Shown: positions 49,599-53,710 of the stretch, piece after piece | Position numbering within the stretch: the first letter of the stretch is position 1 | Layout: each line of letters begins with the position of its first letter | IMG/VR virus record: IMGVR_UViG_3300027754_000034 | Coordinates: 62,001 to 126,000 of that record | DNA length: 64,000 nt | Reading direction: 5' to 3' (one strand) | Notes under the pieces: model-generated | Databases searched by the model: none | What the model saw: only the letters and a program-made list of their open reading frames with translations | Told to the model about the DNA's origin: nothing | Translations under genes and position numbers: made by a program

Positions 49599-51596
49599 AT
49601 GGCCACTGTTCTAACTCCCCCAATTCGCACGATTCTTCCCAAAACGACTCTGACATTCAATCGTGCAAATAAAAATGTCTGGATGGGTCGTTGTTATCAT
49701 ACCTCAAGTTTAATTTCGGGAAACCGAATTCTTGTAACAGGGGGAGTTGACTGCGAATTATCTAAATCTTGTGAAATATATGATATAAATACTAATACAT
49801 GGACAAAAAGCTTTAATTTAATAAGGAATCGGGAAGCTCATTGCGCAGTAGTACTAAATAGCGGAAAGGTTTTAGTAGCTGGTGGCGGATTTAGAATGCA
49901 GGACACCCTTGATTGGTATTCATATACTAACACGGGGGAATACTTCAATGGTCTGGGGTGGTATTCAGCTGCAAATTTCATTTCCGTTACAAAGTCCGGT
50001 CTTTCTGGCGTTTTATTAAATGACGGGCGAGCGTTCTTATCTGGCGGCATATTTGGAACTATTGCTGAGACCAGTTGCGATACTTACGATGAATCTACGA
50101 ATTCATTCTCACCGGCTGCATCATTAAACGTAGCCAGAGCTTTTCATACCTCCCATACACTGAGCAATGGGTTGGTGATTGCTATAGCGGGTTCGGGAGA
50201 CGTAGGAAATTATGTTGATAGTATTGAAATATATGACCCAAATTTGGATACTTGGTCCGTTTTTGGTACTACCCTAACTAATGGTGTAATCTTCCATGCC
50301 AGCGTTTTAATTGACGATGGCATTATCTTGATTTCTGGAGGTTCAAACGGAGCCCCCTTAAATGACTGTTACATATATGATTATTTCTTAGCTACTTTAA
50401 CCCCTGTCTCTTCTATGAATCAACCAAGAGCTGGACACACTTCAACTCTCATTACTAATGGGATTAATGCAGGAAAAGTATTAGTTACAGGCGGGTTTGA
50501 TTCAACTGATATTTTAAAAAGCGCGGAATTATACGATCCTCTTACAAATACATGGACACTAGTTGGAACCATGTATGAAGAAGCATGGGGTCACAGTTCT
50601 TTCGATTTAGGTAATGGAGATATTTTAAACTTCGCAGGACAAGTATCCTGGAATAATTACCTACCTCAGTTAACCACAAATAGCACCCAGAAATGTGACA
50701 CTGACGTAACCATTCCGAACATTTATCCTAGCTTCTCCTTAATCACTAGAATGACATCCAGGGATTATGCGTGTGCTTATAATAACGCAGCGGCAGAAGT
50801 CTCTGCCGTAATGGGCGGTGAAACCATTTATTTAACGGTCGGAAATACGCCCCTTACTATCACTTTGGGTGCCATGGATACTTCAGTAGCAGCCATATGT
50901 AGCACTATAAATAGCGCATCTCTTACAGCGGGAATTGATAATTTATATGCAATTCCCGTATTTAATACTACTCCAAATGTCTTTAAACTAATATCTGTAG
51001 ATAAAATATTTACTGGTAGTGGCATAATGTCGTATGCTGACTGGCAAAAGATCGGATTACCTCAGGGTTACTTAAGCGACCCTGCAGTTTCTTCAGTAGA
51101 AGAAATATCAGTTCCTTATATTAGTAATTATGTAGATAACTCTGACTCTGTAAGCAACATACAACCAATTTCCGATCATGCTAATAGAGTCACTCTCTAC
51201 ATTAAATTCAGGACAGAAGACAATTCATCTTCACACCCTAATCATGGATGGGTGGTTATAGCAGTGTTGTGGGATAATGGTGGTTCTGAAGAATATTTAT
51301 TCCTAAATGGACTAATCGAACCATTTACTGTTAACAATTTCAACGCTGGAAATCCCTTGGTCGGTATAGACTCTCAAACAGTTGGTCTTACTTCCATCCC
51401 GCCAAACATAAGCGGCTCAGCATATAATGGCGTTACTCAATCTATGATAAACCTTGAACCTCCTCCTGGAAGCACAGGTATTAGAATAGCTGTATTTACT
51501 GGTGACCCATCTATGATATTGAATAGTACCGGAGATTTTCAGTATCCCTACATAGCGCCAAAGTTGTCTTTGATGATATCTGATGGTACAAGATAA
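49599..51596 (+). CDS. Kelch-repeat beta-propeller virion protein
   Basis: About seven R..H....L..G.VLV.GG...E.YD....W repeats; GAGG RBS. Confidence 0.88.
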   Translation: MATVLTPPIRTILPKTTLTFNRANKNVWMGRCYHTSSLISGNRILVTGGVDCELSKSCEIYDINTNTWTKSFNLIRNREAHCAVVLNSGKVLVAGGGFRMQDTLDWYSYTNTGEYFNGLGWYSAANFISVTKSGLSGVLLNDGRAFLSGGIFGTIAETSCDTYDESTNSFSPAASLNVARAFHTSHTLSNGLVIAIAGSGDVGNYVDSIEIYDPNLDTWSVFGTTLTNGVIFHASVLIDDGIILISGGSNGAPLNDCYIYDYFLATLTPVSSMNQPRAGHTSTLITNGINAGKVLVTGGFDSTDILKSAELYDPLTNTWTLVGTMYEEAWGHSSFDLGNGDILNFAGQVSWNNYLPQLTTNSTQKCDTDVTIPNIYPSFSLITRMTSRDYACAYNNAAAEVSAVMGGETIYLTVGNTPLTITLGAMDTSVAAICSTINSASLTAGIDNLYAIPVFNTTPNVFKLISVDKIFTGSGIMSYADWQKIGLPQGYLSDPAVSSVEEISVPYISNYVDNSDSVSNIQPISDHANRVTLYIKFRTEDNSSSHPNHGWVVIAVLWDNGGSEEYLFLNGLIEPFTVNNFNAGNPLVGIDSQTVGLTSIPPNISGSAYNGVTQSMINLEPPPGSTGIRIAVFTGDPSMILNSTGDFQYPYIAPKLSLMISDGTR

Positions 51597-51718: not shown

Positions 51719-51802
51719 CATTTTTGGCATAAAACTATCATTACTTGGGGCCAATTTCAACATTTTTGGTATAAAACTATCATTACTTGGGGCAAATTTC
51801 AA
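51719..51802. repeat. 42-bp tandem direct repeat x2
   Basis: CATTTTTGG(C/T)ATAAAACTATCATTACTTGGGGC(C/A)AATTTCAA twice, 2 mismatches. Confidence 0.9.
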
Positions 51803-51820
51803 CACGGGTTTTTATCTTTT

Positions 51821-53114
51821 ATGAAAAATATTTCGAAAAGAGCTGATGAATTGAAACATGAAAATCATATGATGGACGTGGAAAGAATATCAATGCGGAT
51901 TGCTTTTGGGAATTCGAACTTGATCGATTCTCGATTGCTTCGTATTGCGTTTCGCGTCATAGAAGCATCTAAGGTTGATGATTTAATACTCGCTAATCCA
52001 GGTTTAGAAGAGAGTATTAAAAAACTCTCCGATAATGATCCTTCTAAAAGTAATAAATATATCGAATGGAGCGTTAAACAACTCAAACAACTGAAACAAC
52101 TGAAACTAGAAGCCACAATGGGGGATTTAATTTCCACCATACAGGCGTTTCATAAAGTTCAAAATAGACTTGAGAAGAAAGACATTAACCAATACAAGAC
52201 CTTGAAAGAACTGGAAGATGCTATAAAGGATCTTCCAGAATCCAAAACCAAAGAAAAGATCCAGGTGAAATCGGGGGCCAAAAAACTTTGGGAGAATGAC
52301 ACGCACGTACTCTTCAGGATGCATACTCAAAATGCTTGCATCGCATATGGAAAAGGCACTAAATGGTGCATAACCATGAAGGATGACAATCCTTGGGATG
52401 AATATACTAATAATAATTCTATTTTTTATTTTTTGATCGACAAAAGACCATCCGAGTCTGAATATTCAAAGATCGCTTGGAACGTCCGAAGGAATATGGA
52501 TGATAATAGCGTTGAAGAAGTCGAGATCCATGACGCTCTTGATGATTTGATAACAAATTCTACGATTCAAGGAATACCGGAGTTCAGTAATATTAATCGC
52601 ATGATCATAGAGGACGCTCCAAAGGCTCCGGATGGGCCCAATGTCTCTAAGCGAAAGGAACTTTTAAAAAAAAATTCTCGCGGATCACGACGCAGGGGAG
52701 AAAGCCGCCCTGCACGGGGCGGACCTGCGCGGGGCGAACCTAACCAAGGCGGACCTGCGCGGGGCGGACATGGCCGGGGCAAACCTGAAAGGGGGAAACC
52801 TGAGCGGGGCGTACCTGACCAATGCGGATTTGAACGAGGCGGACCTGGGCGGGGCGAACATGACCATCGCGAAACTTAACGGGGCGAATTTGACCAGGGC
52901 GTACCTGTACAATGCGAACCTTAGCGGGGCGGACCTGACCGAGGCGGACCTGACCGAGGCGGACCTGACCGAGGCGGACCTGACCGAGGCGGACCTGACC
53001 GGGGCGGACCTGACCGGGGCGAATTTGACCAATGCGAGATTGATCGGAGCGATACTGGACGGGGCAAAAACTCAGGGAGCCAATTTCACCGGAGCCGATA
53101 TGGAACCTGAATGA
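51821..53114 (+). CDS. IA-leader + WCIT (PcfJ-like) domain + pentapeptide-repeat protein, split by a +1 frameshift at an A9 run (52666-52674)
   Basis: Deleting one A gives ...ELLKKILADHDAGEKAALHGADLRGANL..., in frame with ORF 52770..53114. YGKGTKWCIT motif. A(D/N)Lxx repeats. Confidence 0.8.
52929..53018 (+). repeat. 15-bp tandem repeat x6 (ADLTE/ADLTG)
   Basis: GCGGACCTGACCGAG x4 plus GCGGACCTGACCGGG x2. Confidence 0.92.
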
Positions 53115-53152: not shown

Positions 53153-53710
53153 ATGAACCCTGTAAACGCATCCCGTATGATGAAGAGAATGGCTGCCGCG
53201 TTAGCGGCATCCAAGTCCCCTAACAAATCCGCCGTAGCAAAAGATCTTATGGCATTATCTGATGCCATAAACGGTAATAAGAAAGCTGAAGTTTATTTGT
53301 TAAATAAATTGGCTTTCGATCAGGATCAGGATGAGCGCACGGAGCTGTCTGACGACGTTTTTATTGAATTCCAAAAGCATTATCTTGACTGGGCAGGACA
53401 ATTCGTATACTCACAGACTTTGAAAATGGACGGTGATCATGATCACTTCATTCCTAACTACATCACCAATGGCGGTGGCAATGAATCAATGCCTCCATTC
53501 AAAGGCATAATGGTACCGTTCAATATATCAATTGATAAAGACGGAAAAGTCGTAATTTCTTACGAGGACAAATATGTTCCACAAGGGATTAGTTATTCAT
53601 TCTTTCCTGCGAAAGCTAGAGGCAATTGGTCAAAACCAATTGGAGACTCATTTGAATATTTCACTGATAATTGCCCAGAAATGGCGAACTTCATACAAGA
53701 TAACATGTGA
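53153..53710 (+). CDS. Hypothetical protein with extended N-terminal leader
   Basis: 185-aa ORF; the N-terminus aligns with 10586..11878. Confidence 0.7.
   Translation: MNPVNASRMMKRMAAALAASKSPNKSAVAKDLMALSDAINGNKKAEVYLLNKLAFDQDQDERTELSDDVFIEFQKHYLDWAGQFVYSQTLKMDGDHDHFIPNYITNGGGNESMPPFKGIMVPFNISIDKDGKVVISYEDKYVPQGISYSFFPAKARGNWSKPIGDSFEYFTDNCPEMANFIQDNM

What the first reader, a model, noticed from the sequence alone, without database searches (positions are those of the whole stretch)
52655..53114. A9 homopolymer frameshift switches a GC-rich pentapeptide-repeat domain on or off
Seen: CTT TTA AAA AAA AAT TCT at 52661-52678 contains nine A. With eight A the ORF from 51821 reads LLKKILADHDAGEKAALHGADLRGANL... 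and continues to 53114 (430 aa). With nine A it ends in an R/G-rich out-of-frame tail. GC content jumps from AT-rich to very GC-rich exactly here, which suggests the repeat domain was recently acquired. Known: pentapeptide-repeat proteins such as Qnr and MfpA are DNA mimics that bind gyrase. Inference: either an assembly homopolymer error, or phase variation/transcriptional slippage on TTTTAAAAAAAAA that yields two isoforms of a leader-bearing protein.
Basis: partly seen in the sequence, partly recalled or inferred. Interest (0 to 1): 0.6.

Follow-up and report, generated by a model that had tools for sequence, protein, structure and literature searches.

The report
One extra A splits phage gene
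In an uncultured freshwater huge phage, a run of nine A's (eight in the intact sister copy) cuts a two-domain gene off from its pentapeptide-repeat half; this is most likely an ordinary, recent slip mutation, not a proven on/off switch.

Summary
An A9 run (window 52666-52674) ends the frame of a 284-aa N-terminal domain, and a 148-codon pentapeptide-repeat (PRP) frame opens in +1. With A8 the gene would encode 430 aa.

An 86%-identical sister copy in the same metagenome has the same junction with A8 and reads straight through. The PRP cap helix (ELLKK|ILADH) is split exactly at the run. So the ancestral gene was a continuous fusion.

A9 appears in two JGI assemblies (5 mismatches and 0 indels over 127 kb) and in a Logan contig, so assembly error is unlikely. 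Only contigs were available, not reads or RNA. An A8/A9 mixture and RNA-level slippage therefore stay untested.

Across about 64 related loci the C-terminal domain is always in frame, so nothing indicates a conserved programmed frameshift.

The GC jump is real, but it is shared by all seven or more PRP modules of this phage (GC3 0.75-0.83 against a genome value of 0.34), including the intact copy.

Best reading: a recent slipped-strand +1A mutation in a fast-turnover, modular gene family, leaving an N-domain-only product and at most a low-level rescued fusion. Interest is modest.

The parts
51725..51808 (+). Tandem duplication of a ~42-nt upstream element (21-mer cores at 51731-51751 and 51773-51793). 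A single copy is conserved upstream of the sister gene. Probably the gene's own promoter or 5' leader region.
51821..52879 (+). ORF as encoded with A9: 352 aa, made of the N-domain plus a 68-residue out-of-frame Arg/Gly/Pro-rich tail. This exact protein (P0003) is on record on 3 contigs.
51821..52665 (+). N-terminal domain: a phage-specific alpha/beta domain with invariant F110, D121, G177, T180, W182, C183 (GKGTKWC motif). It is weakly PcfJ-like. In other viruses it is fused to LRV/HEAT, ankyrin, DUF6745-type or pentapeptide repeats, or stands alone.
52666..52674 (+). A9 homopolymer at the frame junction. It is A8 in the intact sister copy. It is the only run of 9 or more inside coding sequence in 284 kb of this phage.
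52668..53114 (+). Pentapeptide-repeat domain in the +1 frame (148 codons, 27 uninterrupted repeats, GC3 0.78), stranded by the extra A.
52928..52987 (+). Exact 15-nt tandem repeat GGCGGACCTGACCGA x4 (TEADL units) inside the repeat domain, a sign of recent repeat expansion.
53153..53710 (+). Downstream gene that begins with the MNPVNAS...KSPNKSAVAKDL N-terminal module shared by paralogues. The unit 'PRP 3' end + spacer + this module' recurs at two other places in the phage.

Best explanation
The A9 is the true genomic sequence of this uncultured freshwater huge phage. It arose from an A8 tract by slipped-strand gain of one A. The tract encodes Lys-Lys inside the helix that caps the pentapeptide-repeat domain of a two-domain protein (weakly PcfJ-like N-domain plus PRP beta-helix).

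The extra A shifts the reading frame. The main product is now the N-domain with a 68-residue nonsense tail, and the still-intact repeat domain is left untranslated. It would be read only in the minority of transcripts or ribosomes that slip on the run: one A fewer, or two more, restores the frame.

The gene belongs to a fast-turnover, modular family. Repeat modules are swapped, duplicated, truncated and lost, so this is a recent, sporadic inactivation or truncation and not a conserved programmed device.

Shown: the run, the frames, the A8 in-frame sister copy, agreement between assemblies, and the family census. Inferred: the direction A8 to A9, recency, and any leaky rescue.
For: - Sister copy: same junction with A8, in frame, differing by exactly one A.
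- Cap-helix motif ELLKK|ILADH...GEKAALHGADL is split at the run. The same motif is continuous in this phage's other PRP genes and in other viral PRPs. AF2 of the intact copy places a confident helix (259-276) across the KK.
- A9 is present in two JGI assemblies that differ by 5 mismatches and 0 indels over 126,943 bp. It is also in a Logan contig (depth ~15, 0 differences) that starts at the first 31-mer unique to A9, and no A8+TTCTC contig exists.
- The repeat domain has 27 uninterrupted repeats and no stops, so the break is young.
- Census of ~64 related loci: the C-terminal domain is always in frame. In-frame A7/A8 runs are common, and no other junction frameshift exists.
- The family is full of debris: a truncated N-domain, orphan PRP ends, and another 1-nt A-run indel at the 5' end of the sister copy.
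- Stand-alone N-domain proteins (224-252 aa) exist in other viruses, so a truncated product can be viable.
Against: - No raw reads were available, so a minor A8 subpopulation cannot be excluded.
- The two JGI assemblies and the Logan run may derive from the same or related libraries, so they are not proven independent.
- The complete integrity of the repeat domain also fits continued expression through slippage or phase switching.
- The A8 copy is a paralogue (or lies in a sister genome), not a demonstrated allele. The direction of change is therefore inferred from the family-wide in-frame architecture, not from an outgroup orthologue.
Confidence: 0.6

Rival explanations
1. Utilised transcriptional slippage (or ribosomal +1 shifting/sliding) on the A9 run. 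The phage makes two isoforms from one gene, an N-domain-only protein and an N-domain+PRP fusion, as in Thermus dnaX or Citrobacter tssM1.
For: - Runs of 9 A or T are reported to give efficient RNA polymerase slippage in bacteria, and A/T runs are used productively in dnaX and tssM1 (PMC5009743; PMC4256274).
- Phage T7-type RNAP slips far more than host RNAP (PMC6260861).
- The repeat domain is fully intact.
- Long runs are otherwise avoided in this genome.
Against: - The arrangement is not conserved. The only relative with a PRP fusion is in frame with A8, and ~64 family members all have in-frame C-domains.
- The zero frame runs on for 68 nonsense codons instead of stopping near the site.
- E. 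coli-type RNAP rescued coding-strand poly(A) frameshifts poorly, and gave no deletion rescue on the poly(A) runs tested (PMC6260861).
- The downstream RNA fold is not significant, z -1.6.
- A -1 shift leads into a frame that closes at 52743, not into the PRP frame.
- No RNA data were available.
Confidence: 0.12
2. Heritable phase variation. The A-tract is a contingency locus, and the phage population holds A8 (ON) and A9 (OFF) genomes that interconvert, toggling attachment of the repeat domain.
For: - It is the longest coding homopolymer in the genome and sits exactly at a domain junction.
- A8 and A9 versions of the junction coexist in one sample at similar depth.
- 1-nt indels in A-runs recur in this family.
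Against: - The A8 version has different flanks and only 86% identity, so it is a paralogue or a sister genome, not an allele.
- No contig carries A8 with this copy's own flank.
- Scans of viral and metagenome collections found no other sample with this junction.
- Contigs cannot show minor variants, so this remains untested rather than refuted.
Confidence: 0.12
3. Sequencing or assembly artefact. The real genome has A8 and an ordinary 430-aa fusion gene.
For: - Homopolymers are a classic source of indel errors.
- The predicted fusion is perfect, with the cap helix and repeats intact.
- All records may trace back to related libraries from one site.
Against: - Three assemblers give A9.
- The two JGI assemblies show 0 indels over 127 kb, which includes dozens of A7/T7 runs.
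- The same data resolve the neighbouring paralogue as A8.
- Depth is about 15x.
Confidence: 0.1

Closest known systems
Transcriptional-slippage genes with A/T runs (Thermus thermophilus dnaX T9/A9; Citrobacter rodentium tssM1 A11)
   Same: A homopolymer of 9 or more at the point where a C-terminal domain lies in another frame. A short and a long isoform are possible in principle (PMC5009743, PMC4256274).
   Different: The out-of-frame layout is not conserved in relatives here. There is no nearby zero-frame stop and no RNA or protein evidence. The needed change is -1 or +2 nt on a coding-strand poly(A), which host-type RNAP does poorly (PMC6260861).
Slipped-strand frameshift pseudogenes and 'rescued' indels in AT-rich genomes
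   Same: A single-base gain in a poly(A) tract of an AT-rich genome splits an otherwise intact gene. Low-level rescue by slippage is plausible.
   Different: The host here is a huge phage, and the split falls exactly between two modules, so the upstream product may remain functional on its own.
Pentapeptide-repeat proteins (PF00805; Qnr, MfpA, AlbG as DNA mimics)
   Same: 27 tandem A(D/N)LXX repeats with an N-terminal cap helix, and a strong Pfam match.
   Different: No evidence of gyrase protection. The domain is fused to a phage-specific N-domain, it is one of seven or more PRP modules in the phage, and its codon composition is foreign to the genome.
PA5oct virion protein EST35_0205 and the PcfJ-like family (PF14284)
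   Same: The N-domain shares 27.7% identity over residues 63-205 with a Pseudomonas jumbo-phage protein annotated 'structural protein, ESI-MS/MS'. The GTxWC motif region gives weak PcfJ hits.
   Different: The Pfam hits are below the gathering score, no function is known for either, and no solved structure matches.

Membership tests
Pentapeptide-repeat family (PF00805) | Tandem five-residue repeats A(D/N)LXX detected by the family profile above its cut-off | tested here: met
   163.5 bits against a cut-off of 20.2, E 6e-49. 27 contiguous repeats with no register break.
Pentapeptide-repeat family (PF00805) | Right-handed quadrilateral beta-helix fold | tested here: inconclusive
   AF2 of the intact sister protein gave pLDDT below 50 for the repeat part, which had no alignment depth there.
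Qnr/MfpA-type topoisomerase-protecting DNA mimics | Binding to or protection of DNA gyrase or topoisomerase IV | not testable with these tools
   No assay is possible. The best bacterial PRP matches are only 55-65% identical and taxonomically scattered.
Programmed transcriptional slippage / recoding site | Homopolymer of about 9 or more A/T at the frame junction | tested here: met
   A9 at 52666-52674.
Programmed transcriptional slippage / recoding site | Out-of-frame arrangement conserved among relatives | tested here: not met
   The sister copy is A8 and in frame. All other ~64 family loci have in-frame C-domains.
Programmed transcriptional slippage / recoding site | Heterogeneous mRNA and two protein products | not testable with these tools
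   No RNA run holds the sequence.
Programmed -1 ribosomal frameshift | Slippery heptamer leading into the extended frame, plus a downstream stimulatory structure | tested here: not met
   A AAA AAA is slippery, but the -1 frame closes at 52743 and the PRP frame is +1. The downstream fold has z -1.6.
Phase-variable contingency locus (simple-sequence repeat) | Repeat-length polymorphism at the same locus within or between populations | tested here: inconclusive
   Only contigs were available. A9 is the only form with this copy's flanks, and no other samples hold the junction.
PcfJ-like (PF14284) | Profile match above the gathering score | tested here: not met
   Best hit is 22.4 bits against a cut-off of 25. 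5 of 32 family members hit at E <= 0.1, and the window protein itself does not.

The most novel reading that the evidence does not exclude
The A-tract is a functional switch in a huge phage. By heritable A8/A9 phase variation, or by polymerase slippage, the phage tunes how much of a possibly virion-associated N-domain protein carries a DNA-mimic-like pentapeptide domain. That would be bet-hedging, or a fixed isoform ratio, against host targets. It would belong to a wider system in which GC-rich repeat cassettes are shuffled among phage genes.
Probability: 0.15. Interest if true: 0.6.

Novelty: new member of a known kind. Interest (0 to 1): 0.3.

Why it matters
By itself this is an ordinary event: a one-base slip in a poly(A) tract splitting a gene. 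Annotators should treat the 352-aa ORF and the downstream 84-114-aa 'ORFs' as one disrupted two-domain gene.

The context is of more interest. An uncultured huge phage (~0.4 Mb, extrapolated from CheckV's 60% for the 257 kb record) carries a modular family in which one conserved N-domain is joined to interchangeable repeat domains: PRP, HEAT/LRV, ankyrin, DUF6745-type. A homologue of that N-domain is a virion protein in PA5oct. All of this phage's PRP modules also keep a strikingly foreign codon composition.

If the tract did act as a switch, it would be a rare documented case of homopolymer-based isoform control in a phage accessory gene.

Tried and rejected
- **Read-level test.** Only Logan contigs were served, with no raw reads and no RNA runs. 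They confirm A9 but cannot show minor variants.
- **Junction pattern scans.** Scans of viral contigs and metagenome contigs with a variable run length found only the known contigs.
- **dN/dS between the window gene and the A8 copy.** The N-domain gives omega 0.58. For the repeat domain, omega is ~0.83 in both the true frame and a shifted frame, because repeats cannot be aligned in an orthologous register. The result is uninformative.
- **Downstream RNA structure as a frameshift stimulator.** z -1.6, not significant.
- **-1 PRF.** Rejected, because the -1 frame closes at 52743.
- **Independent expression of the repeat domain.** The first start codon in its frame is the ATG at 52770 (114 aa), and the JGI gene caller proposed 84 aa from 52860. 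Both lack the cap helix and the first repeats, and neither has a visible ribosome-binding site (sequence). Not favoured.
- **Bacterial donor for the GC-rich module.** None closer than 55-65% identity, and the matches are scattered over phyla.
- **N-domain fold searches** (Foldseek PDB, VIA-align wide, ESM Atlas). No convincing match: best Z 5.7, GNAT-like similarity within noise, and Atlas hits are viral hypothetical proteins.
- **Fold of the intact sister protein.** The repeat part failed, with pLDDT below 50. A first alignment that mixed in PRP modules was discarded as misaligned.
- **Promoter/terminator scan.** At the chance level.

Full report
**1. What is in the sequence**

The window is part of an IMG/VR viral record of 126,943 bp (G000). 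CheckV rates it about 30% complete. It encodes phage-type DNA polymerase, helicases and a UvsX-like recombinase. It has no close cultured relative: the DNA polymerase is at most 32% identical to anything in the phage collection, and the best match is an uncultured 485 kb phage.

At 52661-52678 the sequence reads CTT TTA AAA AAA AAT TCT, in the frame of the ATG at 51821. The A-run is 52666-52674, nine A.
- With A9, the ORF 51821..52879 encodes 352 aa, and the last 68 are an Arg/Gly/Pro-rich out-of-frame tail.
- The +1 frame opens at 52668 and runs to 53114 (148 codons). It is an unmistakable pentapeptide-repeat (PRP) domain: PF00805 E 6e-49, with 27 consecutive A(D/N)LXX units and no register break.
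- GC jumps from about 0.35-0.43 to 0.60-0.66 at the run.

**2. The two frames were once one gene**

A search of viral contigs with the N-terminal 284 aa (P0001) found 66 loci.

L003 lies in a 257 kb record (G001, sample 3300027754) that is identical to the window over 15 kb and carries A9.

L004 (record G002, same metagenome) is 86% identical in protein. Its junction reads CTTTT-A8-TTTTCGCGG, against CTTTT-A9-TTCTCGCGG in the window. The two differ in length by exactly one A, and L004 reads straight through...KRKELLKKIFAGQAKGEDMTGADLRGADL....

The residues around the run belong to a recognisable cap helix that precedes PRP modules. The phage's other PRP genes carry it, for example VDLVKILADHAMWVKGDRAGRKANLEGADL. 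Unrelated viral PRPs carry it too, for example LQTILEKHKLWLQCEVGGERADLS. In the window this helix, ELLKK|ILADHDAGEKAALHGADL, is split by the run: the first half is in frame 0 and the second half in frame +1. An AlphaFold model of the intact sister protein places a confident continuous helix (residues 259-276) across the Lys-Lys encoded by the tract.

**3. Is A9 real?**

G000 (JGI sample 3300010885) and G001 (3300027754) differ by 5 mismatches and no gaps over 126,943 bp. All homopolymers, the A9 included, agree between the two assemblies.

Logan's independent contigs of a 2017 freshwater run contain a 314-nt contig (depth ~15) covering 52644-52957 with no difference. It begins at the first 31-mer that is unique to the A9 version, which is what is expected where the graph branches from the A8 paralogue. 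No contig combines A8 with this copy's own downstream flank.

The exact 352-aa product is on record on three contigs.

I therefore regard an assembly artefact as unlikely, at about 0.1. These data sets may come from the same site or even the same libraries, and contigs cannot reveal minor variants. No RNA run holds the sequence. Scans of the viral and metagenome collections for the junction, with a variable run length, found no further samples.

**4. Is the run unusual?**

Yes. In 257 kb there are 28 A7 runs, one A8 and two A9, with about 11 A 9-mers expected from order-3 composition. The other A9 sits in a divergent intergenic region. The finding's run is thus the only homopolymer of 9 or more within coding sequence in 284 kb.

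**5. Paralogue or allele?**

G002 shares no synteny with G001 apart from pieces of this gene family and exact overlaps of 82-125 nt with the end of G001. The A8 copy is therefore a paralogue in another part of the same genome, or a copy in a sister genome. It is not a demonstrated allele.

It has its own 1-nt difference in a short A-run near the 5' end, which moves its start to the downstream ATG.

The family is also littered with debris:
- a truncated ~70-aa N-domain gene (L091:4430-4612);
- an orphan PRP C-terminal end (L089:14347-14448, minus strand) directly upstream of a paralogue of the window's next gene;
- a similar junction at the end of G001.

**6. Family-level test for a programmed device**

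I checked about 64 loci that encode the N-domain. In essentially all of them the ORF continues in frame for 150-800 residues into a C-terminal domain. In-frame A7/A8 runs are common, and one in-frame A9 occurs. Only the window's gene (and L003, the same sequence in G001) shows a homopolymer coinciding with a switch into a long alternative frame. This argues for a sporadic slip mutation and against a conserved recoding site.

A -1 shift does not reach the PRP frame, because the -1 frame closes at 52743. The downstream RNA fold is not significant.

From the literature:
- Runs of 9 A or T slip efficiently in bacteria and are used in dnaX (PMC5009743).
- An A11 run gives two TssM isoforms in Citrobacter (PMC4256274).
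- E. coli RNAP rescued coding-strand poly(A) frameshifts poorly, whereas T7 RNAP slipped readily (PMC6260861).

Any rescue here needs one A fewer or two more. It is plausible at a low level but is unmeasured.

**7. What the protein is**

The N-domain is confidently modelled (AF2 mean pLDDT 88.8). Its invariant residues are F110, D121, G177, T180, W182 and C183. Other viruses join it to LRV/HEAT, ankyrin or DUF6745-type repeats, or encode it alone as proteins of 224-252 aa.

Family members give sub-threshold hits to PcfJ-like PF14284 (5 of 32, best E 1.2e-4). There is no convincing solved-structure match. A homologue in Pseudomonas jumbo phage PA5oct is annotated as a virion protein found by ESI-MS/MS.

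My working model, which is inference only, is a conserved and possibly virion-associated module that carries an exchangeable repeat domain for target binding. The PRP version may act as a DNA mimic, as known PRPs do.

**8. The GC jump**

All seven or more PRP modules of this phage have GC3 of 0.75-0.83. The genome's long ORFs have GC3 0.34, and about 0.33 is expected from the modules' amino-acid composition. The flanking domains of the same genes are ordinary, at 0.27-0.45.

PRP modules in other AT-rich viral contigs are AT-rich at third positions: 0.01-0.33. The composition is therefore not dictated by the fold. No close bacterial donor exists. The window's module contains an exact 15-nt tandem repeat in four copies.

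It is not specific to this gene, and it is unrelated to the A9. Why modules that are only 47-60% identical to each other all keep this composition is unexplained.

**9. Verdict**

The best explanation is a real, recent +1A slipped-strand mutation in an ancestral A8 tract, which splits a modular phage gene (confidence 0.6). Utilised slippage (0.12), heritable phase variation (0.12) and artefact (0.10) remain as rivals, and a read pile-up plus RNA data could decide between them.

Novelty: a new member of a known kind. Interest is modest at 0.3. The modular family and the compositional anomaly of its repeat cassettes are the more intriguing by-products.

Noticed in passing
window 52668-53114; L084:1184-1624(-), L084:9101-9451, L084:17030-17272(-), L085:17530-17931, L091:2903-3505, L091:6699-7316: Every pentapeptide module of this phage has GC3 0.75-0.83 in a genome with GC3 0.34, while flanking domains of the same genes are normal. 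PRP modules of other AT-rich viral contigs are AT-rich at third positions. No bacterial donor was found. Unexplained (multiple acquisitions, repeat-unit reshuffling, or biased gene conversion).
   Followed up: partly
window 53153-53290; L085:17281-17410; L089:14180-14305(-); related: L084:8897-9030, L091:2735-2870: A ~45-residue N-terminal module (MNPVNAS.MMKRMAAALAASKSPNKSAVAKDLMALSDAINGN) heads three otherwise different proteins. A related one (PRELSNALRRIAAAIEGSKNPSRKLV.ADLK) heads two PRP proteins. It may be a shared targeting or packaging leader.
   Followed up: no
G001 whole record (e.g. window 51885-51960; L084:7903-7950; L085:18780-18824(-)): The motif [ILVMA][ASG]xR[IVL][AS] (e.g. IAIRIAG, ISMRIAF, VAYRVAA) occurs in the first 45 residues of 13 of 331 ORFs, against about 4 expected. 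A possible N-terminal signal in this phage.
   Followed up: partly
window 51725-51808: A ~42-nt element is tandemly duplicated just upstream of the gene. One copy is conserved (30/30 nt) upstream of the sister gene in G002, and it occurs nowhere else in 284 kb. Probably a gene-specific promoter or leader.
   Followed up: partly
L004:3040-3050 (equivalent to window 51859-51862): The intact A8 sister copy carries its own 1-nt deletion in an A4 run near the 5' end. The first 16 codons become a short upstream ORF whose TGA stop overlaps the ATG-ATG start (MMDVER...).
   Followed up: partly
L091:4430-4612; L089:14347-14448(-); L089:17033-17205(-): Gene debris of the same family: a truncated ~70-aa N-domain gene, an orphan PRP C-terminal end in front of an MNPVNAS gene, and a PRP end abutting an N-domain start at the contig end. 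The assemblies break at these repeats.
   Followed up: partly
L085:18889-18897 (G001 178889-178897): The only other A9 in the phage lies in the same 16-nt context (TTTTAAAAAAAAATTC), but between two divergently transcribed ORFs. It would serve as a stutter control for read pile-ups.
   Followed up: partly
window 49599-51596: The upstream neighbour is a 665-aa protein with a multi-blade Kelch beta-propeller (PF01344 E 6e-31) followed by an unassigned C-terminal half. An unusual domain for a phage.
   Followed up: no
L097:2384-3832 (Pseudomonas phage PA5oct EST35_0205): The distant homologue of the N-domain in jumbo phage PA5oct, and two neighbouring genes, are annotated as structural proteins detected by ESI-MS/MS. 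This hints that the family is packaged in virions.
   Followed up: partly
L011:14-2715: One distant family member (31% identity) ends 21 residues after the N-domain and is overlapped by 15 nt by a 637-codon open frame, with no homopolymer at the junction. It could be an adjacent gene or another split fusion.
   Followed up: no
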